In this document: positions 13,218 to 53,380 of the stretch, one piece after another
Numbering within the stretch: position 1 is the first letter of the stretch
How the letters are laid out: each line of letters opens with the position of its first letter
Virus record (IMG/VR): IMGVR_UViG_3300024308_000188
Location: 1-64,000 of that record
Length of the DNA: 64,000 bases
Strand: one strand, 5' to 3'
Translations under genes and position numbers: made by a program
The notes under the pieces: generated by a model
Told to the model about the DNA's origin: nothing
What the model saw: only the letters and a program-made list of their open reading frames with translations
The model's database searches: none

Positions 13218-13673
13218 TTAATCGTCTACTAATTCTTCGCTGTATTCATTAGTGAGGATTAAAGTAATTTGCTTACTATTCTCCAAATATTTTTTCAGGT
13301 CAATCAGATAACCTTCAACATCGTCACCGTAAGCAAGTGAAATGTGTGGTTTAAAATCTGGATAGCTATGTTCAAGCCCTTTCGTTTTAGCATAGTTAAA
13401 CCGTCTTTCTAAGGCAGGGCAATGAAGCTTTAAAACTATAGCTCTCCAAGGAGAACCTACATCACCCATAACATCGCAACCAACTACTTCAGCCGAATAT
13501 CGAACATTCGGACTAGGTACATAATCTGTACCCTGTTTTTCTTTGCTGTACATAAGTGTACAATGCAATTTTTCTTTGGGAATCGGATTTGCAAATTTAA
13601 TTGCACGTTGAATCTTTTGAATATCTGTGACAGCAAAAGCATCAGGTTTAACAGCTAGGTAAGTTCCGACCAT
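13218..13673 (-). CDS. acb1: Anti-CBASS 2H phosphoesterase Acb1 (T4 gp57B family)
   Basis: GTYLAVK, NPIPKEKLHCTLMYSK and HSYPDFKPHISLAY give two HxT/S motifs matching T4 57B. Start moved to the ATG at 13673 after GGAGG. Confidence 0.85.
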   Translation of the reverse strand: MVGTYLAVKPDAFAVTDIQKIQRAIKFANPIPKEKLHCTLMYSKEKQGTDYVPSPNVRYSAEVVGCDVMGDVGSPWRAIVLKLHCPALERRFNYAKTKGLEHSYPDFKPHISLAYGDDVEGYLIDLKKYLENSKQITLILTNEYSEELVDD

Positions 13674-31628: not shown

Positions 31629-32723
31629 TTACAGCTTTTGCATTTTAACTACAGAGCGAGTATTTGGAATTATCAGAGACATAACCTCTGACAGTAACCA
31701 GCCCTTAGTTGTATCGCCTTGGTTTGCACCATCGGTCGGAGTAGATTCAATGCCACCGCGAGAACCTAAAGTTGCGTGATATTCATTATCAGCAACAATG
31801 TACGCTTCACCGCGAGACAGAACACGTTGGTTTTCAGGACGGAAACCGTCAGTAGTTAATTCCAGACCGAAGATAGTTGCAACACGGCCAGTCATAACTA
31901 ATTCGTACTGAGATACTGGAGTCAGTGTATTGGCCCAGGCACCTTCAGATTGAATATCTTCCCAAAAACTGTTTGCGATAACAGCGCGACTTACTGGTAA
32001 GTTCCAATCACGAATTTGTGTTGAAGCACGAGCGATAACGGCAGGAGTAAATGCACCAGCGAAAGCAGCTAAAGTATTTGCTTTACCTACAGTTGCATCA
32101 GCAGCACGTTTCCACACGCGGTCAGCAGCAGTGATCATACCTTCAACAGCATCGTTGTAAGCGTGGTCTAACAGATCGTGAGTCGCTTGACCCAAATCCA
32201 GTTTGTTCACGCGAACAGCAGCTTTCAATTCAAACTCTGGTGGCGTGAAATATTTATCACGCATCATTTGGTAAGAAATTGAAGTTGGGCCAGTAGCTAA
32301 AACGGCTTTAGCTTGATGGCGAGGCATTGGAACTTTTTGAGTTTCACCTTGCTTCAGGTTATTGATCACACACAGATTGCGTGAAAAACCTTGACGACTT
32401 GCTTGTTCACGAACGTCAGCAGCAATGTGAGCACCTAAAGCAGCCCACTTATTAGGACATGCTTTTGCGGCAACTAAAATATCACGTTTCTGCTCGGCAG
32501 ATAATGACAGGAAAGAATCAGGCGTTGCAGCTTGAACAACAGTACCGCTTGATACTGATTGTAAAAGTTGGCCAATTTGTTTTAACAGATCTGCATTGCT
32601 TGATGCGTTAATTTCACCGTTAGATGAAAGTGCAGCCATACCTTGTCCGGCAAAACGAAGATCGTGCAAAGGTGCGCCGTTCTTCAGTTGATAAGAAGCG
32701 CCGACTTGTAAATTGGTTTTCAT
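31629..32723 (-). CDS. Major capsid protein
   Basis: ATG at 32723 after GGAG. GEINASSxxDL N-terminus and the ELVMTGRVATIFG...GF, GGIESTP and GWLLSE motifs recall this jumbo-phage group. Lies downstream of the scaffold gene and is followed by a strong terminator. Confidence 0.85.
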   Translation of the reverse strand: MKTNLQVGASYQLKNGAPLHDLRFAGQGMAALSSNGEINASSNADLLKQIGQLLQSVSSGTVVQAATPDSFLSLSAEQKRDILVAAKACPNKWAALGAHIAADVREQASRQGFSRNLCVINNLKQGETQKVPMPRHQAKAVLATGPTSISYQMMRDKYFTPPEFELKAAVRVNKLDLGQATHDLLDHAYNDAVEGMITAADRVWKRAADATVGKANTLAAFAGAFTPAVIARASTQIRDWNLPVSRAVIANSFWEDIQSEGAWANTLTPVSQYELVMTGRVATIFGLELTTDGFRPENQRVLSRGEAYIVADNEYHATLGSRGGIESTPTDGANQGDTTKGWLLSEVMSLIIPNTRSVVKMQKL

Positions 32724-33506: not shown

Positions 33507-35840
33507 TTACGAATCTAAAAGACTCAGGTAACGATTTGTTTGTGGTTTGTGAGCAGATTCAGATTGAAGAGTTTGAGGCTTAACCGTGGTTAAGTTAGAC
33601 AAACGATCTTCCACTGTATTACTTTCACTTGTTAAGCCACCGCGATTCACAGAAGCAGAAACTACAAGTTGTGTAATTTCGTCTTGAGTATCTTCTGATT
33701 TTTCCAGAAGTTCACGAGCTTGACCTAAAAGGATTTCGCTGTAACGATCACCGTGTTGAGCAAAAGCATCTGAAACCAATGAGTCAGCGTTACGAACTCC
33801 AGCAGAAGATAATGCACTAATCAGAGCATCAGCAACTGGGTTTCTTACATTTGCAAAAACATGACGGTTAATGCCTAAAGCCGAAGTAGCTAATGCTGAC
33901 ATTAAACGATCCATACGATGTTCCATATCTGCATTTATTTCAGCTTGAACATTTGCAGAGTATGATTGCATTTGTGTCTCGACTTCACGAACACGGCTTT
34001 CGCTGCGTTTAATGATTTCGTTAGACACAACAGCATCAACATCAAGGTCTGGACTGATACGTTCAAAGTTAAATTCAGCTAATGCACTTTCAATGCCTTC
34101 AGCTTTCGCATGAGCCATGATAGCGGAACCGAATTTAGCGCTTTCAAAAATATCTTTCAGTGCAGCTTTATCAGCGACACTTGACTCAGACGCCATAGCT
34201 ACAGGAAGTTTTCCATAGAATGCTGTCCAAGTTGATTGACCTTCAATTTTACCGCAGTGAGCAACATGGAATTTATCAACAGATAAATCTTCCGTTGCAG
34301 AAATTGCAGATAACAAATCGACGTCGAATTCCATTACAGGAGATTCAGAACTTTCTGATTCTAAATCCAGACCTTCGATGTCACCGTAGTCACCTTCGTC
34401 ATCTAATTCAGTATCTTCGATTTCTTCTTCAGATTCTTCTTCAGATTCATCCATTTCAATGGACTCTTCTTCAGTTTCGTCATCTTCCATTTCTTCATCT
34501 TCTGATTCGGCCAGAAGTGCGGCAATGTCGGAATCCAATTCAATGTCATCAGAACTTTCTGATTCCATATCGTCTGAATCTAAAGCAGACATTTCTTGAT
34601 CAAGAGCATCTAAATCATACTCTTCATCTTCGTCAGCACTTACAGATTCAAACTCGTCGTTTTCATCATAAGATTCTGATTCAAGAATGTCATCGCTTGA
34701 TAAATCTTCTTCAGCATCTGGATCTAAATCTTCATCCAGATCGCTGTCAGAACTTTCAGATTCCAGTTCTTCTTCGAATTCTAAATCAGAGGCAAGATCT
34801 GCTTCGAGGTCGTCATAATTAACTTCCTCCATTTCTTCCTCTTCTTCGGTTTCTTCTTCGTCACCTGATTCAGCAAGTAACGCAGCGATTTCAGCATCTA
34901 ACTCTTCGTCAGCGCTTTCGCTTGAGATACCTAATTCGTTTTCCAGTTCTTCGATTTCAGCCGACAGTGCTTCCAGTTCTTCATCTTCAGAATCATCTTC
35001 TGAGTGTGAATGGAAATCAGCCGGATCTAACAAACCGCTGGCACAACGAGGACAGTTCAATACAGAACTTGAGGTACTGATTACGTGTGCGCCACAACCG
35101 TCAACATCTGAACAAATATAATGTTCAGCTTCTACGTTGTCGCTACCGTCAGAACTTTCACTCTGCATAGTAATTTCAGAGGCTTCAGCTTCTTCGATGT
35201 CTGGCGATCCGGTTAATGGATCATAATCAAATGAATCACTGGCATGAGTTACAAAAACCGAATGGCCTGAAGTAATAACACGTTGACTTTGATTTGAAGC
35301 TACGGCACGGAAGTTTTCAAGTGCTTCATCTAAGTTATCACCTGAAACTACAATCATGCCTTCAGAAGCTTCAGCTTCTAAATCTTCGTATTCAACATCA
35401 TCCATTTCTTCTTCAGTTTCTTCTTCCGGTTCTTCATCTTCCATCGATACCAGATCTTCATCATCTGATAAATCGACTCCTTCATCTTCTTCAGGCATAG
35501 CGCTTGAACATGAAGGACAGAAAGTGACAGGGCAGTCAGCAACAACATGCTCACCGCAACCATCAGAACATACGCCGTAGAAAACATCTACGGCTCCAGT
35601 ACGAGCGCTGGCTTCAGCAGAAAATTCACCATTGTCCAAAGCATCAAGATCAAAATCTCCTGTGTCTGGATTATATAAAGATGTTGCTGACGCATGAGTA
35701 TAAAACTCATTTGTACCGTCTGTGAAAGCTTGAAGGCTTTCTCCAGAAGCAACAGCTGTATATTTAGCGATAGCCTCTGCCTCACTTGCGCCATGAACTA
35801 TGATAGCCTGTTTTGAGGCTTTCATTTTTGTCTTGATCAT
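33507..35840 (-). CDS. Prohead scaffold/core protein, highly acidic, with two Zn-ribbon repeats
   Basis: D/E-rich centre, about 20 S/A-x-S motifs, helical C-terminus, upstream of the capsid gene. ATG at 35840 after AGGAG. Confidence 0.75.
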   Translation of the reverse strand: MIKTKMKASKQAIIVHGASEAEAIAKYTAVASGESLQAFTDGTNEFYTHASATSLYNPDTGDFDLDALDNGEFSAEASARTGAVDVFYGVCSDGCGEHVVADCPVTFCPSCSSAMPEEDEGVDLSDDEDLVSMEDEEPEEETEEEMDDVEYEDLEAEASEGMIVVSGDNLDEALENFRAVASNQSQRVITSGHSVFVTHASDSFDYDPLTGSPDIEEAEASEITMQSESSDGSDNVEAEHYICSDVDGCGAHVISTSSSVLNCPRCASGLLDPADFHSHSEDDSEDEELEALSAEIEELENELGISSESADEELDAEIAALLAESGDEEETEEEEEMEEVNYDDLEADLASDLEFEEELESESSDSDLDEDLDPDAEEDLSSDDILESESYDENDEFESVSADEDEEYDLDALDQEMSALDSDDMESESSDDIELDSDIAALLAESEDEEMEDDETEEESIEMDESEEESEEEIEDTELDDEGDYGDIEGLDLESESSESPVMEFDVDLLSAISATEDLSVDKFHVAHCGKIEGQSTWTAFYGKLPVAMASESSVADKAALKDIFESAKFGSAIMAHAKAEGIESALAEFNFERISPDLDVDAVVSNEIIKRSESRVREVETQMQSYSANVQAEINADMEHRMDRLMSALATSALGINRHVFANVRNPVADALISALSSAGVRNADSLVSDAFAQHGDRYSEILLGQARELLEKSEDTQDEITQLVVSASVNRGGLTSESNTVEDRLSNLTTVKPQTLQSESAHKPQTNRYLSLLDS

Positions 35841-35918
35841 CGTGTGGCTCCTGTTAAAGTTCATATACAGAGTGTCATTCCGTATACCATTAAATTAAGT
35901 TTTACAACTAAGAACAGC

Positions 35919-35968: not shown

Positions 35969-37012
35969 TTAAGACAATTGCTTCATAATTGCTCTAAGCT
36001 TTTTATGTCCAGGTTTGCCAATATTGACGTATCTTCTATTCATTCCTGTAGTGTAAGCTAAAATACCTAAGCTTGACATTAAAGTTTTAGCTGCTTTTGC
36101 TTTTGCTTCTTCACCAAAATTTACTTGAATGTTTCCGTGACCATCATCTTTAGCCTTCATAAATAAAGCAAGCGTTTTTTTATTTGCTTCATCTAATTTT
36201 GGTTTTTTAGCCATTTCAGATCTTATAGATTTCAGGTCTTTCAGGTAGTAGTTAAGTTCAATACTGTCACCTAAATGTTTGCTTTTGTTTTCAGGTGAAG
36301 TTAAAACATCGTACATCTTTTGCATTTTAGCTATAGCAGCATCAACAGCAGCTAAAGTTTCTTTTGTTGGAATACCTTCGGACTCAAGTTTTTTGTCCAA
36401 GGCTTTCCATACTTTGATTGCGTCATTAACAGGATCTTTTGTTGGAACATAAAGTTCACTTACTTTAGATACTTTAACCGGAGTATTGTCTCCAATATCA
36501 TGTTTGGTTTCTTTTGTATCAGGCTTACCATTATTAGATTGGCTCTCAGACTTAACAAGAGAAAGTAATTTTCTTCCGCTTAAACGTGGGCCAACATACT
36601 GACGAGTAACCTTACCGCCGTCTTTATGGAAAAGCCACCAACCTGGAGCCATCATTCCAGGAGCACGTTTTTTAACGCCCATCTTTGTAGAGGCTGCATT
36701 ATTTTTTGCACCAGGTGCTTTAGCTGCCGCTTCTGCTTGCAATTCATCTTCAGGTTCAGAGTAAGCTTCTGTACTTACATTGAAATCTTCCGATTTAGAA
36801 ACCATTTTATTGCTAAACATTTTCACATTCATAGATGGTGAAAATTTAGTTTCGTCTTTGAAACGGGCTAAAGCAAAATCGCCTTGTCTTGTTTTGAAAA
36901 CATAACGTCCTGATTCCGCAAAAACTAAACGGCCTTTAGCTTGTTCCAAAACATACTGAACACTGTTCGGCACGGCTGGCTTCTTTGCCGAAACGCTCAA
37001 CGAGATAATCAT
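35969..37012 (-). CDS. Basic putative head protein with S-x-S leader, paralog of the 37045-38745 N-domain
   Basis: MII-SLSVS-AKK, then PNSVQY...GRY...APGA...GWW...RLSGRKLLSL. Confidence 0.7.
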   Translation of the reverse strand: MIISLSVSAKKPAVPNSVQYVLEQAKGRLVFAESGRYVFKTRQGDFALARFKDETKFSPSMNVKMFSNKMVSKSEDFNVSTEAYSEPEDELQAEAAAKAPGAKNNAASTKMGVKKRAPGMMAPGWWLFHKDGGKVTRQYVGPRLSGRKLLSLVKSESQSNNGKPDTKETKHDIGDNTPVKVSKVSELYVPTKDPVNDAIKVWKALDKKLESEGIPTKETLAAVDAAIAKMQKMYDVLTSPENKSKHLGDSIELNYYLKDLKSIRSEMAKKPKLDEANKKTLALFMKAKDDGHGNIQVNFGEEAKAKAAKTLMSSLGILAYTTGMNRRYVNIGKPGHKKLRAIMKQLS

Positions 37013-37044: not shown

Positions 37045-38745
37045 TCAAGAAACGTAGTGAGTTAATTCAAATGGATTTTGAGTGCGATCATCTGCATGAT
37101 AAACAGCAACAGTTAAACCTTTAGCGCTCTTACTGATCAAGCCGCCTTTAGATTTAATTGGCAACACAAAGCGAGTTGTTTTACCAGCAGCAGGTTTTGC
37201 TGTTCCATGTGTGACGATGCGTTCAAAATCGGCAGCTTCGTAGGCTAATCCTTTTGAAGCTAAACCATCGACGGCATGTTGAACGGCAGCTGAGTAAGTA
37301 GGGAAGTAAATTTGCTCACTGCTTTTTGATTGCAGTACGCTATTCGCACCACTTTGCTTACGAGCTTTTAAATCAATACGCTTGTTAAGACCATCAATGC
37401 TGGCCTGAAGTTTTTTACGACGATTAACGTCTTTTGTTTTTTCAAGCATGTCTTTCAAACGATCTATTGTTTGAACGTCACGATCAATTTCTTGATCCAA
37501 CTTTTTAACTTCTTGTTTGGCCTGTTTTACTTCAGCATTTGGAACCGTAGCTTTTGGCTTAGCTGCCGGAGCTTTAGATGCTGGCTCAGCCTTTGGTTTT
37601 TTAGCAGGAGGAACTGCTTTACCAGCTTCAGGTGATTTTGAAGGTTTTTGTTTATGAGCAGGAACTACCTGACCTGCACTTCCATTACGAATTTTTTCAT
37701 GGAAGTCAGCTAAAGCTTTTACAACCTTATCACGAAGTTTTGTTTGCTTAGCAATCTCAGCTTCTACTTTGGCTTTAGCTGGTTTTGTTTTCAACTTAGT
37801 CAACTTTTCTCTCAGTGCTTTAATAGCCTGAACAATAGCCGTGCCTTTTTCCTTCAGATTCATATAAGCTGTTTGTTGGCGTTTAGGTAACGCACTAATA
37901 TCAGACTTAGTGATCTTTCCTGTAGCAGCAGGTTTCTTAACGGCAGGAGCCTTAGCTGAAGGATTAATTTTTGGTGCAGGTTCACCAGATTTCAAAGCTT
38001 TAATCTCAGCAGAAATTTCTTTACGACGGGCAATTATTTTCTTCAGCTTTTCTTTCAAAGCAATTTTAGATGTTGCACGTTGTAAAGTGGTTAAGCGTTC
38101 TTTGCCAGCAGTAAGTTCGCCACCAAGTTTTTTGAACTCAGTCTGCAAAGCTTTGATTTGACCAGCTGCTTTTAATTCAGCACCAGTTTTCTTGGCCGGA
38201 GCTTTTTTGGTTTCGTCAATCACTTCAGTTTTTGGCTTAGGTGCTTGAGAAGGATCGATTAAAGATAAGATACGACGACCACTGATGCGGCCACCAGCAA
38301 AAGCTTTTGCAACTTTACCGTCATTACCTTTACGGAAAACCCACCAACCTTTTGATAAGGTATTTGGTGCATGTGTTTTCTTGCCCATCTTTGAGTCAAG
38401 ACCAGAAACTTTCGCACCAGGTGCAGCACTCAAAGAATCCATTTCAATTGGCTCAAGTGCAAAGATTTGTTCTTGTGTAAGATCCATATCACTTGCAGTA
38501 ACCTTGAAAACTTTAGTGGCTACGCTTGGACTCATTTTAACGTCATCTGCAATCCGCACAATAGCGAAGGTTGCACGACGATTTTTTAAAATGTAACGGC
38601 CTGGAACAGCAAACACAACACGAGATTTCGATTTTTCCGCAGCATACTTAATGCTATTCGGAATTACAACTGGTTTCTTAGCTTTTGGCTTGGCTGCATT
38701 TTTATCATGCACAGGCGTAACCTTGGCTTTAATCGGCTTTTTCAT
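37045..38745 (-). CDS. Lys/Ala-rich coiled-coil putative internal head/DNA-condensing protein
   Basis: Histone-H1-like KKPA/KAPA linkers. C-terminal domain TYSAAVQHA...KPAAGKT...FELTHYVS follows QSKSS. ATG at 38745 after AAGGA. Confidence 0.7.
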   Translation of the reverse strand: MKKPIKAKVTPVHDKNAAKPKAKKPVVIPNSIKYAAEKSKSRVVFAVPGRYILKNRRATFAIVRIADDVKMSPSVATKVFKVTASDMDLTQEQIFALEPIEMDSLSAAPGAKVSGLDSKMGKKTHAPNTLSKGWWVFRKGNDGKVAKAFAGGRISGRRILSLIDPSQAPKPKTEVIDETKKAPAKKTGAELKAAGQIKALQTEFKKLGGELTAGKERLTTLQRATSKIALKEKLKKIIARRKEISAEIKALKSGEPAPKINPSAKAPAVKKPAATGKITKSDISALPKRQQTAYMNLKEKGTAIVQAIKALREKLTKLKTKPAKAKVEAEIAKQTKLRDKVVKALADFHEKIRNGSAGQVVPAHKQKPSKSPEAGKAVPPAKKPKAEPASKAPAAKPKATVPNAEVKQAKQEVKKLDQEIDRDVQTIDRLKDMLEKTKDVNRRKKLQASIDGLNKRIDLKARKQSGANSVLQSKSSEQIYFPTYSAAVQHAVDGLASKGLAYEAADFERIVTHGTAKPAAGKTTRFVLPIKSKGGLISKSAKGLTVAVYHADDRTQNPFELTHYVS

Positions 38746-39689: not shown

Positions 39690-40346
39690 TTAACCAAAAT
39701 TCTTGAAAACCTGAGCAAACACTTTCATGTAATCTTTACGAATGCCGTGTTTGTATATACGAATAAGAATAGGTTCATATAACTCAAGAACTTTATGCAA
39801 TTCGGTTACAGCAGCCGAATACGTAACTTGAGATAAAGAACTTTGACCGCTGTTTGACATATCCAAATAAAACTTAGCGCAAGCGTATAACAGATTAGCT
39901 ATATTTTCGCTTTTAAAGTTTGCGATCATTCTAACACTATCAAGTAACTCTCTGCGAAGTTTTGAAGCTACTTCTATATACTGGGTTTCATTATTCGCTT
40001 GTATTAGTGAAGGATTGGCAATAAGTGAGGTAGAACATTTTGCTATAAATTCTTTAACCCACTCGCTATCTTTACTTTTCCACGGAGAAGTACCGTATAA
40101 AATTCTGCGTTTGAGATTTGAGATTTCAAGATCAAACTTTGCAACCTCTTCCTGAAGATTTCGTTTACGAGTATTAAAGCTTTTATCACTTTCTATTTCG
40201 TTTGCGTCCTGAGTTGTGGCGTTTACCACACGGTCGATTTCACCTAAAGCACGTACTACGGATTGACGCTCAAGGTACAACGCGCAAATTCTTTGAAACT
40301 CTTCATCTTCTTGACTTGATTCTGAAATGAATACACGAATTTTCAT
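39690..40346 (-). CDS. Helical protein with S-x-S leader
   Basis: N-terminus MKIRVFI-SES-SQ. Confidence 0.7.
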   Translation of the reverse strand: MKIRVFISESSQEDEEFQRICALYLERQSVVRALGEIDRVVNATTQDANEIESDKSFNTRKRNLQEEVAKFDLEISNLKRRILYGTSPWKSKDSEWVKEFIAKCSTSLIANPSLIQANNETQYIEVASKLRRELLDSVRMIANFKSENIANLLYACAKFYLDMSNSGQSSLSQVTYSAAVTELHKVLELYEPILIRIYKHGIRKDYMKVFAQVFKNFG

Positions 40347-40374
40347 ATTTGTTCCTTAGTGGAAACCTTATTAG

Positions 40375-40399
40375 AAAGAGCACCCAAAAGAATGCTCTT
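40375..40399 (-). terminator. Intrinsic terminator-like hairpin
   Basis: Minus strand AAGAGCATTC-TTTT-GGGTGCTCTT-T. Confidence 0.65.
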
Positions 40400-40550
40400 G
40401 AAATAAAGTTTAGATAAGAAGTGCCTTCATAATGATCTCCAGTTAAAGTTGATCAAATCACTGACTCTATGCAGCGGAGCGGTTGCTCTACTACCTTCTT
40501 TAACGTGGTGTAGTTACCACGAGATATGGATCACCTCCTTATCCTATGGA
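40400..40550 (-). ncRNA. Candidate structured RNA with a perfect extended Shine-Dalgarno and minigenes
   Basis: TAAGGAGGTGATCCA at 40541-40527, three hairpins, and the GGAG-preceded minigene MKALLI* at 40430-40410. Confidence 0.4.
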
Positions 40551-40554
40551 AAAA

Positions 40555-41775
40555 TTATTTAAGTAAGGGAGCGACAATTTTGCTGATAACAGCTTTACTA
40601 ATTGGTTTACTCATGTCAAAAGTTTCACCAAAACTGGCCTTATACTTAGTCATGTGCATCATCTTACCATTTTTGATTCCGAAACGTGCTTTAACGGTTC
40701 CGCGACGTGGATGATAAAAACTAATGCCACCAGGTGTAGGTATTAAGTCAATACCTTTTGCCTTAAGATCTTTGCCGAATTTATCAACAACATATTGACT
40801 TGCTTCATTGAATTTTCCTGTTGACGCAGGTTTTTCAACAGTATTGGTTTTGATCTTAAGATTCTTGGTAATAGCCTCCAAAACTTCTGCGTTAGTTCCT
40901 TTCACCAGTTTATGGTTAGTAACCTTAGTAGATTTCGGCCCATCCTCTTCGATCATTACAATGCCAGTACCGACATAAATATTTAGTTTATTGTTGCCGC
41001 CTACAGTAATCATATTGATAGGTAAGGAAACAGCAAAGTGATTGTATCTGTGTGCAGGTACATTAGGTGACGGACTAAAGTGCTCACGTACACGAGCTTT
41101 AATAGTCATGCCATCACCGAAAGCTTTTTTCAAGCTACGTGCAATAGAGGCTCCTAATTTCTTCACTGAATCTGCGTCTTTGTACAAAACCATATCCAAC
41201 TCTTTTACAGCATTACCAGTTATTTTTGCTAACTGGTAAACATCAGCATCCGTATCTTTATAAAGTTTCAATTCGATTGCACGATCTAAAACTTCTGACC
41301 AAATATCGTCGGCAGTGACAGGATTTCTCACTGCTTTTTCTGTGGTCTTAGAACGCATAAAATTCCGAACACCCATACCAAGGCCATGATGCGATCTGGC
41401 ATAGGCTTTAGCACGATCTGTTTTATTCAGTTGAGCTAAAGTAGCTATAGCTTCTGGAAATTCTTTTGCCACCAAACGTACAGTTGCATCAGAGAAAAGC
41501 TGTTTCTTTGTTTTTGAATCAGCAGCTGAAGGTTTAACCTTAACTTCACGGGAATCAGCTTTACCAAGCTTAGCAATCTGAGCAAACACACGTTTGATTT
41601 CTGCGCCATTGAATTCTTTCTTTTGCAATTTTTCTGTAATAGTATCAGGTGTTGCTTTGCCAGTAAACTTAACCAGAACTTTATCGTCAACAGACACTTC
41701 AAAACTGGTGCCAACTTGATTTACTACAATATCACGCTTACGCGCTGAGGTTGATGTGAATACACGAATTTTCAT
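40555..41775 (-). CDS. Basic multidomain protein with S-x-S leader
   Basis: MKIRVFT-STS-AR. Internal HHGLGMGVRN...ADDIW segment. Confidence 0.7.
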   Translation of the reverse strand: MKIRVFTSTSARKRDIVVNQVGTSFEVSVDDKVLVKFTGKATPDTITEKLQKKEFNGAEIKRVFAQIAKLGKADSREVKVKPSAADSKTKKQLFSDATVRLVAKEFPEAIATLAQLNKTDRAKAYARSHHGLGMGVRNFMRSKTTEKAVRNPVTADDIWSEVLDRAIELKLYKDTDADVYQLAKITGNAVKELDMVLYKDADSVKKLGASIARSLKKAFGDGMTIKARVREHFSPSPNVPAHRYNHFAVSLPINMITVGGNNKLNIYVGTGIVMIEEDGPKSTKVTNHKLVKGTNAEVLEAITKNLKIKTNTVEKPASTGKFNEASQYVVDKFGKDLKAKGIDLIPTPGGISFYHPRRGTVKARFGIKNGKMMHMTKYKASFGETFDMSKPISKAVISKIVAPLLK

Positions 41776-41802
41776 TTTTGATTTCCTTTAACTAAAATAT
41801 TT

Positions 41803-41849
41803 AATTACTTGAATTCTTTTTAGAGCGACCAATTACTTGAATTCTTTTT
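41803..41849. repeat. 19-bp direct repeat duplicating a gene 3' end
   Basis: aattacttgaattcttttt at 41803-41821 and 41831-41849. Confidence 0.9.
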
Positions 41850-42510
41850 TCACTGGACGACCCTGAGAAGGTCGAGATTTTTGATCCAGCTTTAGTTTGA
41901 CAGTTATATAAACTTCGTCTGTGCCGACAGTGCTTGTCATTTGTGGATAGTCAACAACTTCCATACTAAAACTTCTGACATCATGTGTTTTAGTATTTTT
42001 AGCAACAAGCTTATCAATGCGGTCAGCAAAAGCCAGTTTACATTTAGCTGCAACTTCAAGACCTTTATCTTGAACAATATTCTCTTTCTGACGAGTCATT
42101 TGTTGGATTGCTACATTCCAACCGAAGTCTGCGGTCTTAGATTTTTTAGCAGGTGCTCCAACTGATTTGGCTTTAGCCATTCTTTTTAATGTAGCAATTG
42201 CTTTGGTAGCAGCACCAGAGCTAAAGTGGAGACAATAGCCAGTTTTATCCACAGCAGAAGTTATATGTGCTGGATTGACTCCGAGCAAAGTAGCTAACTC
42301 TTCAACTTTATTTTGAGCAACGTGTGATTTACGTGCAAGTCGGATAGCATAAGCTAATCCATCAATGGTCTTAACAAAAGGTTTAGTTACCTTTAGTTCC
42401 CTGATCAATTTATTATCTGACTCAAACAATAAGGAACCTAATTCAGCAAGTTTTGCTTTAAATGCACGAGTTGTCGAAGCAGATTCAGAAATTAATATAT
42501 TAACCTTCAT
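41833..42510 (-). CDS. Basic protein with S-x-S leader
   Basis: Start at ATG 42510: MKVNILI-SES-AS. Confidence 0.7.
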   Translation of the reverse strand: MKVNILISESASTTRAFKAKLAELGSLLFESDNKLIRELKVTKPFVKTIDGLAYAIRLARKSHVAQNKVEELATLLGVNPAHITSAVDKTGYCLHFSSGAATKAIATLKRMAKAKSVGAPAKKSKTADFGWNVAIQQMTRQKENIVQDKGLEVAAKCKLAFADRIDKLVAKNTKTHDVRSFSMEVVDYPQMTSTVGTDEVYITVKLKLDQKSRPSQGRPVKKEFK

Positions 42511-42518
42511 AGAATTCC

Positions 42519-42851
42519 CTACCAAAGATCGTTGTATGCCCAATACGCAGCTTGCCATTTATCTTTATAAGCTGGCTTACCATTAGACTTTAAGATGCCA
42601 CGAAATCTTTTGCGAAAATTTTCTCTACGTTCAGGATCTTTGTGAGTAGTGAAATCTTCATAGTCAACATGGCCATACTTTATTAGTTTAAAATTATTTC
42701 CTTTACGTGCTAATACCGCACGTTTGTAGCGCTTATCCTTTATTTCAATGGGTTTATCAAAATCAATGAAAGTCATTCCCTTGTATACAAGTTTACCATT
42801 TTCTTTTTGAATACTGTCTACACTTGTACAAAGACTCACAAGAATTTTCAT
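42519..42851 (-). CDS. Tlr6F/DUF5754-like small basic protein with leader variant
   Basis: MKILV-SLC, then KLIKYGHVDYEDFTTHKDPERRENFRKRF...AAYWAYNDLW. Confidence 0.65.
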   Translation of the reverse strand: MKILVSLCTSVDSIQKENGKLVYKGMTFIDFDKPIEIKDKRYKRAVLARKGNNFKLIKYGHVDYEDFTTHKDPERRENFRKRFRGILKSNGKPAYKDKWQAAYWAYNDLW

Positions 42852-42865
42852 AAGCTCACCTAAAG

Positions 42866-42883
42866 AAAAGGGCCGAAGCCCTT
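42866..42883 (-). terminator. Intrinsic terminator with cUUCGg loop
   Basis: Minus strand AAGGGCTTCGGCCCTTTT. Confidence 0.8.
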
Positions 42884-43040
42884 AATTAAACTTCGATTTA
42901 CGCATAAAGGCAAAGGGGCCAGTTTTTTGTTTAAGGCGTGCATGAATCTCAGGAATTTCATCAACTAATTTTTGTTGACGTTTATTGCGCTGATCTTCAG
43001 GAATTTTCTTAGCAAGATTAGCCACCATGAGTTTTTTCAT
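42882..43040 (-). CDS. Small basic protein (52 aa), below the ORF-track cutoff
   Basis: MKKLMVANLAKKIPEDQRNKRQQKLVDEIPEIHARLKQKTGPFAFMRKSKFN*. Fills the gap between 43043 and the terminator. Confidence 0.55.
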   Translation of the reverse strand: MKKLMVANLAKKIPEDQRNKRQQKLVDEIPEIHARLKQKTGPFAFMRKSKFN

Positions 43041-43042
43041 TC

Positions 43043-43645
43043 TTACTCTTCCGCTTGAACTTTACTTAGCTTACTTAAAAGCTGTCTACCAAGCTGATTC
43101 TTAAATTTATCCAACTTACCAGGAGTCTTTAAAACATCCAAAGCTTTCTGGTGAGCAAGCTTTAACTCTTTGTAGTTATCTCGTTCACGCTCAAAAGTAG
43201 CTAAAGCTTTCTTTTTGGCGATAGGATTAGTTGCGTTTTCTGCATCTTTCTTTGCTTTCAACGCTCTATTTTTGTGACTTTCCAGTGAAGCAGTTGTTTC
43301 TTCACTATCAGCATCCAAACCAAACTCTTCCATAGCGCCAGAAAATCTTTTGGCGAAACTTTGCTGCAAATCGTCATCCAGTTTAGATACTTCTTTTAAT
43401 AGATTAGGATCTAAACCTTTAGATGCTTCTGCAAATCTAGGATCTAAGCCGGATGCGAATTGGCCAGTCCTTGATTTACGTTCCTTATGTTTTGCCATAC
43501 GCATATGATGTTTAGCGTACTGACTATTTGGATGTTCTTCAATATATTCTTTTTTAGCTTCGTCTGAAAGTTCATCAAACCAATTGGAGCCTCCAATTTT
43601 TTTAGGTTTGTTATTTGAAGAGCTAATAAATACTTTGATTTTCAT
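43043..43645 (-). CDS. Protein with S-x-S leader and WFxxLS...YIxxHPxS motif
   Basis: MKIKVFI-SSS-N, then NWFDELSDEAKKEYIEEHPNSQYAK. Confidence 0.7.
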   Translation of the reverse strand: MKIKVFISSSNNKPKKIGGSNWFDELSDEAKKEYIEEHPNSQYAKHHMRMAKHKERKSRTGQFASGLDPRFAEASKGLDPNLLKEVSKLDDDLQQSFAKRFSGAMEEFGLDADSEETTASLESHKNRALKAKKDAENATNPIAKKKALATFERERDNYKELKLAHQKALDVLKTPGKLDKFKNQLGRQLLSKLSKVQAEE

Positions 43646-43682
43646 AGGGCCGCCTTAATAGTAGGAATCGAACGCATTAAGT

Positions 43683-44510
43683 TCATACATCAAACTTTTT
43701 CTGTGCAGCAGCTGAAGTAAAGAACCAATTATATCCTTTAAGGACTCTTTTGGTTACAGGATCTTTAGCTGACCACGTAAGAATCTTTGAGCGTTTACCT
43801 GCTAATACAGCAAAAATCGAAGCGGTTTCACCGATCTTTGGTCTGACTGAACGGGCTTCACTTAAAGTTTTTTTCTTTGTTTCTTTACCTTCAATAACAA
43901 CTAAATAACTATAGCCTTGTGCTTTAAGTTCAGCACGTTTCTTAGCGGATTCCGCATCGTGTATAGCATCGTTACGCTTTTTCTGAACTCCAGCTAATTC
44001 TTCACGTTGTTTTTGAAGTTTAGCTATTTGTTCATCTAAGGCTTTTATGCGTTGTTTGTCTTTTGCCTCAGTTTTGTTAAAGAATGCTGTTGTATCTTTA
44101 GAATTTGTAGTAAGTGTTATACTCTGACTTCCAACATCTTCTTTTGTTATTTTGTTTCCGATTAAACTCAAAAGTTTAGCTTTAGTTAATGTTAAAGTTG
44201 ATAAATTGCCGGGATGCTTACGTGTAAGAGAATTGTCACGCTCTGCAACAGCAACTATGGATTTAACTGATCCAGATTTAGTGCTATTCACTTCGGTTAT
44301 ACGATAGTTAGTGGCCGCCTTTGTTATAACAGGAGGCATCTTTTTGTAGCGCTCTATAGTTTCTTTCGGAATAAAGCCAATGCTCGGTCTTGGTGGAGTC
44401 TTTTTAGTTGATACTATTGTATATAAAGTAAAAGTACCGCCAACAACAATTTTCTTTTCTTGGGCAGCAGTTAAATCTGCGCTCTCAGACAACATAACTT
44501 GAATTTTCAT
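43683..44510 (-). CDS. Basic protein with S-x-S leader
   Basis: N-terminus MKIQVML-SES-AD. Confidence 0.7.
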   Translation of the reverse strand: MKIQVMLSESADLTAAQEKKIVVGGTFTLYTIVSTKKTPPRPSIGFIPKETIERYKKMPPVITKAATNYRITEVNSTKSGSVKSIVAVAERDNSLTRKHPGNLSTLTLTKAKLLSLIGNKITKEDVGSQSITLTTNSKDTTAFFNKTEAKDKQRIKALDEQIAKLQKQREELAGVQKKRNDAIHDAESAKKRAELKAQGYSYLVVIEGKETKKKTLSEARSVRPKIGETASIFAVLAGKRSKILTWSAKDPVTKRVLKGYNWFFTSAAAQKKFDV

Positions 44511-44528
44511 AAGATTTTCCTATTGAAT

Positions 44529-44927
44529 TTATTTAAGAGAAGCACTTTTGGTGCCTTTCTTAGATTTAAGAGTAGCCTTTTCGCCGTTCAACAGTTTTGC
44601 CAAAGCAGCCGCAGATAAAGGTTTAATTTCATCTTTTGAATGTTTACCTTCTGGAGCAATCAACACTCTTTTTAATTTTCCGTTGCCAGCTATTTCAACT
44701 TCTTTGATGACAAGAGTATATTTGTTTAGTTGTGGAGTTACTTTGTTATCAGCCTTACGTGTGTAAGCACCTGTAACAACCATAAGAAGTTTCGTTCCTT
44801 TGGTCATAAGTTTTTTGATTTGTGACGAAGTAAATCTGTCGTCAGCCAACTGTCTGAATTTAGAGTCAGATGCTTTAAGTCTGGCCAAAGAGTACGAACT
44901 TTGCGAAACGAATACTTTGATTTTCAT
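44529..44927 (-). CDS. Basic protein with S-x-S leader
   Basis: N-terminus MKIKVFV-SQS-SY. Confidence 0.7.
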   Translation of the reverse strand: MKIKVFVSQSSYSLARLKASDSKFRQLADDRFTSSQIKKLMTKGTKLLMVVTGAYTRKADNKVTPQLNKYTLVIKEVEIAGNGKLKRVLIAPEGKHSKDEIKPLSAAALAKLLNGEKATLKSKKGTKSASLK

Positions 44928-44936
44928 ATGTTTTCC

Positions 44937-45857
44937 TTAAATTTTAATTAAGCGATCACCAGTTGGATTTCCGTTAATTAAAAAGTTGTTATCGAAGTAT
45001 TGTTTTGCAAGTTCCCAACCATCTGTGCAGCTTAAACCACGTTCAGATTTACCGTGAACCATATACTCACACAATGTAGCCCAAGCTTCTTCATACCAAG
45101 GATAAGTATATCCTGCATGATTAAATTGATCTGGATGCAAACGTCTTGCAACCAAAGCTTGTTTGTAACGCTCCATCTGAGATTGACGTACAATGCCATC
45201 ATACATTAAAAAGTGAGCAAGCTCGTGCGTGATAACTTGAGCAAGGAATCCTGAAGTTATTGCACCTGAACGTAAGCCTTGAAGTTGATTGAAGTTCAGA
45301 ACAAGCAACTGACGCGCTTTTATAGAGGCATCGGTTTGACGACTGAAGCAAGTAGGTACTACATCAGATTTACACAGAATAAAATGATTTAAGTTGATCT
45401 TCTTCTTAAATCCTGTGTAATCTAAAGCTTGATTTACGGCCTTACGCTCAATGTCAGCTAATGGGTAGCACCATTCATTTCTTCTGCGTTCAAGATTTTC
45501 CTCAAGAAAACCTATTGCTAATGGATGCGCTTTTTTAATTGCAGGAGGTTGAAGAACAACACGGTAGTTGTAATTCAATGTTGCACTTTCGCTAACAATA
45601 TCCTTAGAGTCAATGGCAACAGGTTTAATGTTGTTTAGTGTAATCCAAACAGAATCGAACAAAGCAGGATCGCCATTAAGCATTAAGCTTTTTTCAACAA
45701 GATCTCGCAAAGTACGTTCATCAACTACAGCAACAGCGCCTTTGTCATCACGAATTTTAATACGTGAATCTAAGTACACATGCCAGAAATGATTACGCTC
45801 TATTTTAAACCATTCACCTAATTGGAATGGAGTATCTGAATTGTATCTGAATTCCAT
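44937..45857 (-). CDS. Zincin-like metallopeptidase
   Basis: VITHELAHFL followed by YEEAWATLCE. Internal IV-SES-A precedes the catalytic region. Confidence 0.7.
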   Translation of the reverse strand: MEFRYNSDTPFQLGEWFKIERNHFWHVYLDSRIKIRDDKGAVAVVDERTLRDLVEKSLMLNGDPALFDSVWITLNNIKPVAIDSKDIVSESATLNYNYRVVLQPPAIKKAHPLAIGFLEENLERRRNEWCYPLADIERKAVNQALDYTGFKKKINLNHFILCKSDVVPTCFSRQTDASIKARQLLVLNFNQLQGLRSGAITSGFLAQVITHELAHFLMYDGIVRQSQMERYKQALVARRLHPDQFNHAGYTYPWYEEAWATLCEYMVHGKSERGLSCTDGWELAKQYFDNNFLINGNPTGDRLIKI

Positions 45858-46651
45858 TAGCGCACCATCATAATGTTTTTAGGATCGTGTTGGTTACTTA
45901 CGTAAGCCGGATTTTCAACTTGGCTGCATTCAAAACCAGTTGAATCGTGACACCAACGGTAAACAATTTGCCCATCTTTCAAGTACGGCTTGCGACCTAA
46001 ACGAGTATGTGAACAAGTTAACATAGTGTCTTGGTGGGTAGTGTGGCCGCAATAACTGCAAGTGTAACTTGTGTAATAAAATCCTACGCTATGCGTATTG
46101 CATTCGTTTGTCAGAATGCGATTACAGATTTCAGGATCACGAGTACGATCATATGCCAACAGCAGAATTAATTTTGCGTGATTGTTACGGAAACCACGAA
46201 GCGGTTTTAAATAAGCATCTAAAATAATGCCACGCGCTTTGGTGTGATCCTGATTATCATGTTCGCGGAAAGTTGGTTTACCTTTGTAAGTTTTGTATGC
46301 TTGCATACCCAACTTAGGTTTGAACTGTAACAACTCACTCAAGCTTGCACTATCGCCATTTGTATTTGGCAGATCTGTGATTAATGCCGGAGTAGGAACC
46401 ATTACATAATCACGAATATCAGGACTTGTGTTGTAAACTTTTGCAGCGGCTGGAAGCCAAGCATTAACATCAAGTACAACACCCTCACAGCCACCAACCA
46501 TTTCTGGTTTAGCTGTGATTGCCATATTGTTTTTTGAAAGTTTGTGCAGATCTATACCGCGACCTTCACCTTCACGAACTGAATAACGGCCAATATCAAA
46601 AGAAGAAGATACAAACTTACCTATATCCGTATTTAACTTAACAGGAACCAT
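45857..46651 (-). CDS. Prohead (maturation) protease with CxxC insertion
   Basis: GKPTFREHD (His), GIILDAY, HSVGF (Ser) and FECSQVENPAY fit the caudoviral/herpes-fold prohead protease pattern. ATG at 46651 after AAGGAG. Confidence 0.75.
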   Translation of the reverse strand: MVPVKLNTDIGKFVSSSFDIGRYSVREGEGRGIDLHKLSKNNMAITAKPEMVGGCEGVVLDVNAWLPAAAKVYNTSPDIRDYVMVPTPALITDLPNTNGDSASLSELLQFKPKLGMQAYKTYKGKPTFREHDNQDHTKARGIILDAYLKPLRGFRNNHAKLILLLAYDRTRDPEICNRILTNECNTHSVGFYYTSYTCSYCGHTTHQDTMLTCSHTRLGRKPYLKDGQIVYRWCHDSTGFECSQVENPAYVSNQHDPKNIMMVR

Positions 46652-46664
46652 TGTGTACTTCTCC

Positions 46665-47210
46665 TTAATCAATGTTTTCAGCAATTTGCTGCTCTAAGCG
46701 TTTTTGCTGAGCAAGCAACAGTGTGGGATTACGTTTAAATTTCTGACCATCAGTAAATATGTAATCAGAAATAAGATCGATGCCTTTATTTTGTTCGATA
46801 AAGTGTTTGCAAATAACGTCAAGATAAGCAAACATTTCTACAAGACTTGCAAGAGGAAATTCTTTACGTATTTCCAACTCAACACGGTTACGCAAACTAT
46901 TGAATAAGTTGTATAACTCGTGTTTGTTATTGTGGCCGCTTAAGCTTGCTTGATAAGCTTGCTGTAAACTTTCTAAATCGCTGGCAAGCTTTCCTTGAGT
47001 AAATTCACTGTTACCCGCAGGAACAACAGCGACTTTCATTTCTTTAAGTGCTTGCTTACCTAAGAAATCTATTTGCTCAACAGCTCTTTTAACATCAAGT
47101 TGTTGATTTGGCGGAAAGCATTGAAGTGCAGCCATATAAACAGGAGTCTGGTAGCCTTTTACAATAGCACTGACACCTGATGTACTTAAAAACAATTTAG
47201 CTTTTTTCAT
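46665..47210 (-). CDS. Helical protein with S-x-S leader
   Basis: N-terminus MKKAKLFL-STS-GV. Confidence 0.65.
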   Translation of the reverse strand: MKKAKLFLSTSGVSAIVKGYQTPVYMAALQCFPPNQQLDVKRAVEQIDFLGKQALKEMKVAVVPAGNSEFTQGKLASDLESLQQAYQASLSGHNNKHELYNLFNSLRNRVELEIRKEFPLASLVEMFAYLDVICKHFIEQNKGIDLISDYIFTDGQKFKRNPTLLLAQQKRLEQQIAENID

Positions 47211-53379: not shown

Positions 53380-53380
53380 G

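What the first reader, a model, noticed from the sequence alone, without database searches (positions are those of the whole stretch)
40328..44927. Leader cassette is identical at DNA level between unrelated genes
Seen: ATGAAAATTCGTGTATTCA (19 nt) starts both the 40346 and 41775 genes. ATGAAAATCAAAGTATT (17 nt) starts both the 43645 and 44927 genes. The downstream coding sequences diverge immediately. Seven leader-bearing genes are arrayed between 39690 and 44927. Inference: new cargo genes are recruited or swapped by recombination at, or duplication of, the leader, making this a variable cargo array.
Basis: partly seen in the sequence, partly recalled or inferred. Interest (0 to 1): 0.62.

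Follow-up and report, generated by a model that had tools for sequence, protein, structure and literature searches.

The report
Phage head-cargo genes sharing a leader
An uncultivated giant phage has, next to its head-maturation protease, a fast-changing row of otherwise unrelated genes that all begin with the same ~11-residue tag, probably a "pack me into the capsid" signal, and gene cassettes are swapped exactly at that tag, much as in the internal-protein loci of phage T4.

Summary
On the minus strand, the genes starting at 40346 and 41775 share 19 nt from the ATG, and those at 43645 and 44927 share 17 nt. These are the two longest shared gene-start prefixes among 26,335 gene pairs in the 214.5-kb genome. 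Codon bias does not explain them (P about 5e-4).

The window is part of a jumbo myovirus distantly related to PaBG, NCTB and Dickeya JA29. Seven genes at 39690-44927 begin M-K-(I/V)-x-(V/I/L)-(F/L/M)-x-S-x-S-(A/S). They lie just downstream of a T4 gp21-like prohead protease.

The same phi-x-S-x-S-(S/A) motif occurs 11 times in the acidic scaffold-like protein and once in the capsid protein's N-terminal part. The cargo proteins are basic. In relatives, leader-tagged cargos include ART-PolyVal, DarA_C and DUF5754 domains.

Phages whose protease is 98% identical carry different cassette sets and orders. Four breakpoints map to the Shine-Dalgarno/ATG/leader sequence. Three of seven leaders do not track their cargo.

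Best reading: a T4-internal-protein-like array of capsid-targeted, probably injected proteins, shuffled at the leader. Packaging and cleavage are inferred, not shown. I rate it a new variant of a known kind.

The parts
45857..46651 (-). Head maturation (prohead) protease with a T4 gp21/herpesvirus assemblin-like fold. It lies upstream of the array, separated from it by one gene.
   Evidence: phrog_18299, E 5.9e-88. AlphaFold model pLDDT 84.6. VIA-align Z 10.0, rmsd 2.8 A over 138 residues to T4 gp21 (5jbl_A); herpesvirus proteases score Z 5-6.3.
44937..45857 (-). 306-aa protein with an HELAH (HExxH) motif, lying between the protease and the array. It is kept in all relatives, and its counterpart in L021 hits KMPT-N. 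Possibly a metallopeptidase.
   Evidence: Sequence. phrog_37079, E 4e-14. Family 5 in all loci. KMPT-N on the L021 gene at 13426-14403.
44529..44927 (-). Array gene 1, 132 aa, leader MKIKVFVSQSS, pI 10.3. Its cargo family sits at a different array position in L009-L011.
   Evidence: It is a remote paralogue of gene 2.
44896..44927 (-). The 32-nt leader of gene 1. Collinear homology with L009/L010/L011 ends at 44896, so this is the cargo-swap junction.
   Evidence: blastn blocks; nucleotide alignment.
43683..44510 (-). Array gene 2, 275 aa, leader MKIQVMLSESA, pI 10.1. Homology with relatives resumes exactly at its ATG (44510).
   Evidence: S8, S10 and A11 are invariant across 10 family members at 25-87% identity. 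Residues 1-10 are unstructured in the model, pLDDT about 40.
43043..43645 (-). Array gene 3, 200 aa, leader MKIKVFISSSN. This is a presence/absence cassette: present in the window, L011 and L022, absent in L009 and L010.
42882..43040 (-). 52-aa ORF without a leader. It is an insertion of about 146 nt specific to this phage, followed by the hairpin AAGGGCTTCGGCCCTT.
   Evidence: Gap in blastn blocks. Terminator-like hairpin at 42883-42868.
42519..42851 (-). Array gene 4, 110 aa, leader MKILVSLCTSV, carrying a DUF5754 domain. This domain is also found inside large 'minor head protein and DNA pilot' proteins.
   Evidence: PF19058, 37.2 bits against a cut-off of 27.4. phrog_220, E 3.7e-15.
41833..42510 (-). 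Array gene 5, 225 aa, leader MKVNILISESA. The true start is 42510, not the upstream ATG at 42558.
   Evidence: Relatives start at the leader.
40555..41775 (-). Array gene 6, 406 aa, leader MKIRVFTSTSA. This is the most conserved cargo. Only 9 homologues were found among 5.8 billion proteins.
40347..40556 (-). 210-nt intergenic element inside the array. It is strongly structured and nearly invariant in relatives.
   Evidence: z = -4.45. Alignment of 6 relatives. No Rfam family.
39690..40346 (-). Array gene 7, 218 aa, leader MKIRVFISESS. In DNA its leader is closest to that of gene 6 in the same genome, not to the leaders of its orthologues (MKIKVFVS...).
40339..40356 (-). SD + spacer + ATG + first leader codons (AGGAACAAATATGAAAAT). 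It is single-copy here but flanks a 151-aa cassette on both sides in L022, so it is a crossover site.
35969..37012 (-). 347-aa basic protein with a leader-like start, MIISLSVSAKK. It is a paralogue of 37045-38745.
   Evidence: 41% identity over 147 aa. Matrix score 10.1.
33507..35864 (-). 785-aa very acidic protein (pI 4.1) just upstream of the capsid genes. It has 11 copies of phi-x-S-x-S-(S/A/N) and is a putative scaffold/core protein and protease substrate.
   Evidence: 11 observed against 0.78 +/- 0.87 in composition-preserving shuffles, maximum 6 in 5000..
31629..32723 (-). Major capsid protein. The motif FLSLSA lies at residues 71-76, about 21% of its length.
   Evidence: phrog_2522, E 1.9e-82.. 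The PaBG capsid protein loses about 20% of its mass on maturation (PMC7412058).

Best explanation
The window is part of a jumbo myovirus. The seven genes at 39690-44927, and several others elsewhere in the genome, encode mostly small, basic proteins. Each begins with an ~11-residue leader, M-K-(I/V)-x-(V/I/L)-(F/L/M)-x-S-x-S-(A/S).

[quoted passage not shown] It would bring the protein into the assembling prohead core. The neighbouring gp21-like prohead protease would then remove it at or next to the S-x-S motif. The cargo would stay in the head with the DNA and be ejected into the host, where at least some cargos act on host defences or host proteins.

Every cassette starts with nearly the same Shine-Dalgarno/ATG/leader DNA. 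Recombination between these short repeats inserts, deletes, moves and swaps cassettes, and each new cargo arrives already equipped for expression and packaging.

Shown here:
- the shared leader;
- its excess DNA identity;
- the protease fold;
- the motif's enrichment in scaffold-like and capsid proteins;
- the variable gene content;
- breakpoints at the leader.

Inferred:
- packaging into the head;
- cleavage of the leader;
- ejection into the host;
- any anti-defence role.
For: Location: the array lies downstream of the prohead protease and upstream of the scaffold-like and capsid genes. In Dickeya phage JA29 the same interval holds a single gene.

Protease: it has the T4 gp21 fold, Z 10.0.

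Leader specificity: a matrix built from 35 relatives' leaders flags 15 of 230 N-termini, against 0.23 expected.

Motif distribution: [LIVFM]xSxS[SAN] occurs 56 times, against 20 +/- 4.3 in shuffles. Eleven copies are in the acidic 785-aa protein, against 0.78 expected. One is at capsid-protein residue 71.

Selection acts on the peptide: S-x-S-A is the only invariant block in the 275-aa protein's family, and Ser is encoded by both TCN and AGY codons.

The leader is not part of the folded domain in the model.

Six of seven array proteins have pI of 9.4 or more, against a genome median of 6.9 (P = 3e-4).

Cargo domains in relatives begin right after the leader: ART-PolyVal from residue 13 and DarA_C from residue 11. 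DUF5754 is present in the window. These are domain families of proteins predicted or known to be packaged and injected (PMC5512222).

Cassette turnover and leader-located breakpoints.

T4 precedent: diverse internal proteins share only a capsid targeting sequence (PMC3012670), and the internal-protein loci are highly variable (PMC2839356).
Against: - There is no proteomic or experimental evidence that any of these proteins is in the virion or is cleaved.
- The residue between the two serines varies (E, T, S, Q, H), so the motif does not fit a strictly Glu-specific gp21-type site. The exact scissile bond cannot be named.
- The capsid-protein motif is present in the window and in L016, but not in NCTB or JA29.
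- PaBG and JA29, which have a homologous protease, lack the array.
- Breakpoints at gene boundaries are partly what selection for viable recombinants would give anyway.
- Some junctions have only 5-8 nt of identity, which is closer to microhomology than to homologous recombination.
- None of the seven window cargos has a demonstrated function.
Confidence: 0.68

Rival explanations
1. The leaders are what remains of common ancestry. On this view the array is one tandemly duplicated gene family. The N-terminus is kept for a structural reason unrelated to targeting, and the DNA identity reflects recent duplication.
For: Some neighbours are true paralogues: the 132-aa and 275-aa genes (hhalign 97%), and the pair 35969-37012 / 37045-38745. 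Several families occur twice in relatives' arrays.
Against: For both identical-leader pairs, only residues 1-11 align in profile-profile comparison. Cargos carry different Pfam domains: ART-PolyVal, DarA_C, DUF5754 and topoisomerase IB. The leader lies outside the folded part in the model. Leaders do not track cargo phylogeny. The same motif recurs inside the scaffold-like protein.
Confidence: 0.12
2. The conserved start is an RNA-level feature: a translation-initiation region kept A/U-rich and unstructured for high late expression. On this view it is not a peptide signal.
For: The leaders start ATGAAAAT and follow a similar AAGGA Shine-Dalgarno sequence. 'MKI' is the commonest N-terminus in the genome, in 14 genes.
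Against: Orthologous leaders differ at synonymous sites while keeping the peptide. Arg is CGT or AGA, Phe is TTC or TTT, and Ser is TCN or AGY. The conserved S-x-S-A lies 22-33 nt into the gene. The same peptide motif occurs internally at variable distances from the N-terminus, for example at residue 16 in 53381-55081 and residue 71 in the capsid protein.
Confidence: 0.06
3. The leader is a targeting or processing tag, but not for the capsid interior or the gp21-like protease. It might be recognised by the adjacent HExxH protein, direct proteins to the tail or baseplate, or act as a stability tag.
For: An HExxH protein (44937-45857) is kept beside the protease and the array in all relatives. 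Leader-like N-termini also occur on genes within the tail-gene region, at 2747-3139, 4635-5129 and 11641-12189.
Against: The motif is concentrated in the scaffold-like protein and present in the capsid protein. These are classic substrates of prohead proteases. The array is embedded in the head module.
Confidence: 0.1
4. The leader is a secretion or lipoprotein signal peptide, and the proteins are exported.
For: The sequence starts Met-Lys, followed by hydrophobic residues and small residues (S-x-S) that loosely resemble an A-x-A site.
Against: The hydrophobic run is only 4-5 residues and is interrupted by charged or polar residues (K, R, Q, N at position 4). There is no lipobox cysteine. The proteins are highly basic and are encoded in a head-morphogenesis module. 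This rival is judged by inspection; no signal-peptide predictor was available.
Confidence: 0.02

Closest known systems
Phage T4 internal proteins (IPI, IPII, IPIII, Alt) with their capsid targeting sequence, and the variable internal-protein loci of T-even phages
   Same: Diverse, otherwise unrelated proteins share only a ~10-residue N-terminal sequence. The phage encodes a gp21-fold prohead protease. The proteins are basic. The locus is hypervariable between close relatives. A relative carries a leader-tagged ADP-ribosyltransferase, which parallels T4 Alt.
   Different: The leader has no sequence resemblance to the T4 sequence. The candidate processing motif is phi-x-S-x-S-(A/S), not (L/I)-x-E. 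The array sits directly in the head module next to the protease. Crossovers map to the SD/ATG/leader coding DNA rather than to promoter/stem-loop elements. Nothing here has been tested experimentally.
PeSL-mediated modular shuffling in T4-type phages (Arbiol et al. 2010, PMC2839356)
   Same: Short conserved repeats flanking small non-essential genes act as crossover sites for insertion, deletion and replacement of cassettes. Some crossovers in that work also fall between the SD and the ATG. A GGGC...GCCC hairpin flanks one cassette here.
   Different: PeSLs are intergenic early promoter + terminator units. Here sigma-70-like promoters are not enriched (13 found, 28 expected), and the repeat extends into the coding leader, so it also carries a protein-level function.
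Propeptide-bearing head and ejection proteins of phiKZ-like giant phages and Salmonella phage SPN3US
   Same: These are giant myoviruses in which many head proteins, including paralogous families, are processed by a gp21-like protease (papers listed: PMC5694885, PMC7411985).
   Different: From my own knowledge, those proteases cut after Glu in (A/S/G)-x-E motifs, and the propeptides are long and not a shared 11-residue cassette. I did not find a report of a cassette array with identical leaders in the papers I read.
Polyvalent proteins of phages and conjugative elements (Iyer et al. 2017, PMC5512222), and phage P1 DarA/DarB
   Same: The same domain families occur here: ART-PolyVal, DarA_C, DUF5754 and KMPT-N. 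The predicted life history is also the same: packaged with the DNA and injected early.
   Different: Here the domains are separate small proteins, each with its own leader, instead of many domains fused in one giant polypeptide.

Membership tests
T4-type internal-protein / capsid-targeting-sequence system | A prohead protease of the gp21/assemblin fold is encoded by the phage | tested here: met
   Z 10.0 to 5jbl_A over 138 residues. phrog_18299, E 5.9e-88.
T4-type internal-protein / capsid-targeting-sequence system | Otherwise unrelated proteins share a short conserved N-terminal sequence | tested here: met
   Only residues 1-11 align between cargo families. 15 of 230 N-termini score above the 99.9th percentile of internal windows.
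T4-type internal-protein / capsid-targeting-sequence system | The leader is homologous to the T4 capsid targeting sequence and ends in an (L/I)-x-E cleavage site | tested here: not met
   The leader consensus is MK(I/V)x(V/I/L)(F/L/M)xSxS(A/S). Only 3 of 7 window leaders have I/L-S-E; the others have T, S or Q at that place. The T4 sequence and site are from my own knowledge.
T4-type internal-protein / capsid-targeting-sequence system | The proteins are present inside the capsid and the leader is removed by the protease | not testable with these tools
   Only indirect support: motif enrichment in scaffold-like and capsid proteins, and an unstructured leader in the model.
T4-type internal-protein / capsid-targeting-sequence system | The locus is hypervariable among close relatives | tested here: met
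   Different cassette sets and orders among the window, L009, L010, L011, L022 and L023.
PeSL-type regulatory cassettes | A conserved intergenic sigma-70-like promoter plus stem-loop flanks each cassette | tested here: not met
   Promoter-like sites are not enriched (13 against 28.4 +/- 6.4). Only one terminator-like hairpin lies between the array's genes; a second closes the 210-nt intergenic element. The repeats are SD + ATG + leader.
Polyvalent proteins | Several disparate effector domains fused in one polypeptide | tested here: not met
   Array proteins are 110-406 aa with at most one Pfam domain each. The domain families themselves are shared.
Sec/lipoprotein signal peptides | A positively charged n-region, an uninterrupted hydrophobic core of about 7-15 residues, and an A-x-A or lipobox site | tested here: not met
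   By inspection of the leaders, the hydrophobic stretch is 4-5 residues and interrupted, and there is no lipobox. No predictor was run.

The most novel reading that the evidence does not exclude
The SD/ATG/leader segment may be a dual-purpose 'plug-and-package' site. As DNA, it would be the preferred crossover point of an integron-like cassette system that needs no dedicated integrase. As peptide, it would be a capsid-import and processing tag. Any ORF recombined behind it would then at once be expressed late, packaged and injected. On this reading the gp21-fold protease of this clade has a previously undescribed small-residue (S-x-S) specificity, closer to herpesvirus assemblin sites than to T4's Glu sites.
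Probability: 0.3. Interest if true: 0.72.

Novelty: new variant of a known kind. Interest (0 to 1): 0.58.

Why it matters
Injected internal proteins are a phage's first line against host defences, and in T4 they are a recognised arms-race locus. This finding adds a second, sequence-unrelated example in an uncultivated jumbo-phage clade.

Three features stand out:
- The leader is clearly defined.
- There is a candidate new protease recognition motif.
- The nucleotide-level junctions are unusually clean, showing that cassettes are exchanged at the leader itself.

If the leader is confirmed as a packaging tag, it has two uses. It would serve as a search key for new injected effectors and anti-defence proteins in metagenomes. 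It would also be a possible tool for loading foreign proteins into large capsids.

Tried and rejected
- Complex prediction (protease + first 45 residues of the 132-aa protein) returned 'no answer', score 0.01, after six busy refusals. It counts neither for nor against binding.
I therefore did no read-level search for cassette junction polymorphism, and read laying was not used.
- megablast of the array against 50,697 phage records found nothing.
- The metagenome-contig scan returned only the window's own contig. The viral-contig scans gave the same phage (L002), one 75% relative (L003) and one distant locus.
- Sequence search of the protease against PDB found nothing, and Foldseek alone was weak (E 0.2). 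The fold call rests on VIA-align.
- PHROGs, Pfam and PADLOC gave no function for six of the seven window cargos.
- My first regex for the leader hit only the seven array genes and overstated their exclusivity. The relatives-derived matrix corrected this.
- I considered that the 218-aa gene's MKIRVF leader arose from a leader-to-leader deletion of the cassette that separates the 406-aa and 218-aa genes in L009-L011. I rejected this because the intergenic DNA upstream of the 218-aa gene is orthologous to that of L011.
- Covariation analysis of the intergenic element failed because the sequences are too similar.

Full report
**What the window is**

All long ORFs run on the minus strand. They include a major head protein, tail sheath proteins, a GroEL chaperonin, an NAD-dependent DNA ligase and a head maturation protease. 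The window is the first 64 kb of a 214,526-bp virus contig. An identical stretch lies on a 319.5-kb IMG/VR contig, L002. By protease similarity (45-51% identity), the nearest named phages are Phage NCTB, Dickeya JA29, Erwinia Y3 and Pseudomonas PaBG. This is therefore an uncultivated jumbo myovirus of that broad group.

**The observation**

The two DNA identities are exactly as described, read on the minus strand.
- Of 26,335 pairs of gene starts in the genome, the 19-nt and 17-nt prefixes are the two longest. The next is 13 nt.
- I kept the amino acids and drew codons from the genome's usage. A 19-nt pair plus a second pair of at least 17 nt then arose in about 5 of 10,000 simulations.
- The shared codons include minor ones: GTA 0.25, TTC 0.32, ATC 0.18.
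- Codon preference therefore does not explain the identity.
- For both identical-leader pairs, profile-profile comparison aligns only residues 1-11.
- Not every cargo is unrelated, however. The adjacent 132-aa and 275-aa genes share an N-terminal domain (probability 97%).

**The leader as a peptide**

The seven genes begin M-K-(I/V)-x-(V/I/L)-(F/L/M)-x-S-x-S-(A/S).

Selection acts on the peptide rather than the RNA.
- Orthologous leaders differ at synonymous sites, for example CGT or AGA for Arg, and TCN or AGY for Ser.
- In the 275-aa protein's family, S8, S10 and A11 are invariant across members down to 25% identity.

The leader is also found outside the array. A scoring matrix built only from 35 leaders of other phages places 15 of this genome's 230 N-termini above the 99.9th percentile of internal windows, against 0.23 expected. 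These are the seven array genes, the 347-aa protein at 35969-37012, a type IB topoisomerase at 6334-8001, and several small proteins in the tail-gene region.

**Where the motif recurs**

- The core [LIVFM]-x-S-x-S-[S/A/N] occurs 56 times in the proteome, against 20 +/- 4.3 in shuffles. It has a strong N-terminal bias.
- Eleven copies lie in one protein: the 785-aa, pI 4.1 protein encoded just upstream of the capsid genes. Its own composition predicts 0.78 copies, and the maximum in 5000 shuffles was 6.
- The capsid protein has FLSLSA at residues 71-76, and L016 has FMSLSN at the same place. That is about 21% of the protein, and PaBG's capsid protein is reported to lose about 20% of its mass on maturation (PMC7412058). 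The site is not conserved in NCTB or JA29.
- In two other head-region proteins the motif lies at variable distances from the N-terminus, just before a conserved block. One example is ...LLSLSAKYDELD in 53381-55081, which is shortened to MFSFSAKFEELG in L019.

This distribution covers the scaffold-like protein, the capsid protein's N-terminal part and the N-termini of accessory head proteins. It is the pattern of a prohead protease's substrates.

**The protease**

The gene at 45857-46651 models well (pLDDT 84.6). It superposes on T4 gp21 at Z 10.0, rmsd 2.8 A over 138 of 165 residues. Herpesvirus assemblins follow at Z 5-6.3.

**The cargos**

- Six of the seven array proteins have pI 9.4-10.3, with 13-18% lysine. 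The genome median pI is 6.9 (P = 3e-4).
- The 110-aa protein carries DUF5754, and it also matches the middle of 'minor head protein and DNA pilot' profiles.
- In relatives, leader-tagged genes of the same array carry ART-PolyVal from residue 13 (L012) and DarA_C from residue 11 (L019).
- These domain families were described in proteins predicted to be packaged and injected. T4 Alt (an ADP-ribosyltransferase) and P1 DarA are packaged head proteins (PMC5512222).
- In the model of the 275-aa protein, residues 1-10 are unstructured (pLDDT about 40) and the fold starts near residue 15. That alignment is shallow, so this is weak evidence.

**Variability**

In JA29 one gene separates the protease from the acidic protein, and PaBG has no array. 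In this phage about twelve genes fill that interval.

I name each cassette by its protein length in the window, or in the contig that carries it when the window lacks it. Lengths differ by a few residues between contigs, and each cassette is written at one representative length. The contigs carry the following, in order. L022 and L023 are partial contigs.

| Contig | Relation to the window | Cassette order |
|---|---|---|
| Window | - | 132, 275, 200, 52 (no leader), 110, 225, 406, 218 |
| L011 | protease 98% identical | 135, 100, 275, 200, 110, 225, 367, 177, 94, 93, 406, 132, 218 |
| L009 | protease 98% identical | as L011, but lacks 200, 94 and 93, and has a 166-aa cassette before 406 |
| L010 | protease 98% identical | as L011, but lacks 200, 94 and 93; also lacks the 166-aa cassette |
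| L023 | 406-aa gene 71% identical | has 94, 93 and 166 |
| L022 | closest for the 406-aa gene, 86% | has an extra 151-aa cassette between 406 and 218 |

The more distant L003, L012, L016, L019, L020 and L021 have largely different cassettes, nearly all starting with the same kind of leader.

**Breakpoints**

1. Window against L009-L011: collinear homology runs through the HExxH gene, the ribosome-binding site and 32 nt of the first leader. It ends at 44896. It resumes exactly at the next ATG, 44510. Between these points the window has the 132-aa cargo, whereas the others have the 135-aa and 100-aa genes. In the others, the 132-aa cargo family lies between the 406-aa and 218-aa genes.
2. The 151-aa cassette of L022 is flanked by AGGAACAAATATGAA(A/G)AT on both sides. 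The window has one copy, at about 40339-40356. Upstream identity with the left copy, and downstream identity with the right copy, are nearly perfect.
3. Loss of the 166-aa cassette in L010 and L011 joins that cassette's upstream region to the 406-aa gene's leader at ATGAA.
4. The 200-aa cassette is flanked by a hairpin, an SD and ATGAAAAT on both sides.

In addition, three of the seven window leaders are closest in DNA to a non-orthologous leader.
- The 218-aa gene's leader matches the 406-aa gene's leader of the same genome. It carries a whole-codon AAA-to-CGT difference from its orthologues plus two flanking synonymous changes.
- The 132-aa gene's leader matches the leader that the 218-aa gene has in other genomes.

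Two cautions apply. Some junction identities are short (5-18 nt). Selection for viable recombinants also favours junctions at gene boundaries.

**Comparison with known systems**

The closest known system is the set of T-even internal proteins. These are diverse proteins sharing only a capsid targeting sequence (PMC3012670), encoded in highly plastic loci with more than 30 variants (PMC2839356).

The differences here are:
- the leader sequence;
- the candidate processing motif;
- the array's position inside the head module;
- crossovers that use the coding leader rather than promoter/stem-loop cassettes. Sigma-70-like promoters are not enriched.

I therefore treat it as working like the T4 system without being a sequence member of it.

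**Limits**

- Packaging, cleavage, ejection and function are all inferred.
- The complex prediction gave no answer.
- The exact scissile bond cannot be named. Cleavage after the residue between the serines, or after the second serine, would both fit.

Noticed in passing
window 40347-40556 (- strand): This is the 210-nt gap between the 406-aa and 218-aa genes. An ~85-nt core is almost 100% identical in six relatives whose flanking coding DNA is only 70-86% identical. It folds strongly (z = -4.45) and ends in a terminator-like hairpin. It begins with (T)AAGGAGGTGATCC, a 12-14-nt perfect complement of the 16S rRNA 3' end (from my own knowledge of that sequence). No start codon follows at normal spacing. 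There is no Rfam family..
   Followed up: partly
window 6334-8001 (- strand): A 555-aa type IB topoisomerase (Pfam Topoisom_I, E 1e-15) starts with the leader-like MIISISAVSK. In Phage NCTB a similar-sized protein with a similar start (L004 13767-15452, MLITLS...) sits inside the array next to the protease. This may be a virion-packaged topoisomerase..
   Followed up: partly
window 44937-45857 (- strand): A 306-aa protein with an HELAH motif is kept beside the protease or the array in every relative. Its L021 counterpart hits KMPT-N (metallopeptidase N-terminal fusion domain). It could be a second processing enzyme or an injected peptidase..
   Followed up: no
window 33507-35864 (- strand): This 785-aa protein is labelled 'ATPase' by PHROGs and in the JA29 annotation. 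It is extremely acidic (pI 4.1, net charge -184) and has Cys-rich C-x-x-C pairs and 11 S-x-S motif copies. It looks like a scaffold/core protein, so the 'ATPase' label is doubtful..
   Followed up: partly
window 43043-43645 and 47207-48904 (- strand); L003 17247-17630; L012 18651-19031: A second shared block, W-(F/W)-x-x-L-...-K-x-Y-(I/L)-x-x-H-P-x-S-x-Y-A-K, follows the leader in the 200-aa array protein. It also appears near the N-terminus of the 565-aa protein two genes upstream of the protease and in small array proteins of relatives. Its function is unknown..
   Followed up: no
window 35969-37012 and 37045-38745 (- strand): Two adjacent, very basic paralogues share an N-terminal domain (41% identity over 147 aa) and are duplicated likewise in NCTB and L003. 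The 566-aa copy carries a net charge of +66..
   Followed up: no
window 42882-43040 (- strand): A 52-aa ORF without a leader lies in an insertion of about 146 nt found only in this phage. It is followed by the hairpin AAGGGCTTCGGCCCTT..
   Followed up: no
window 28659-30284, 59144-60445, 60464-61555 (- strand): Three genes hit tail-sheath families. Two of them are adjacent paralogues matching phrog_12249. The contig also encodes a GroEL (125-1732) and an NAD-dependent DNA ligase (51415-53391)..
   Followed up: no
L006 13141-13674 (Pseudomonas phage PaBG gp258): PaBG lacks the array. However, the putative LigT-like RNA ligase two genes downstream of its protease begins MQIKVAMYSAEA, which resembles the leader..
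   Followed up: no
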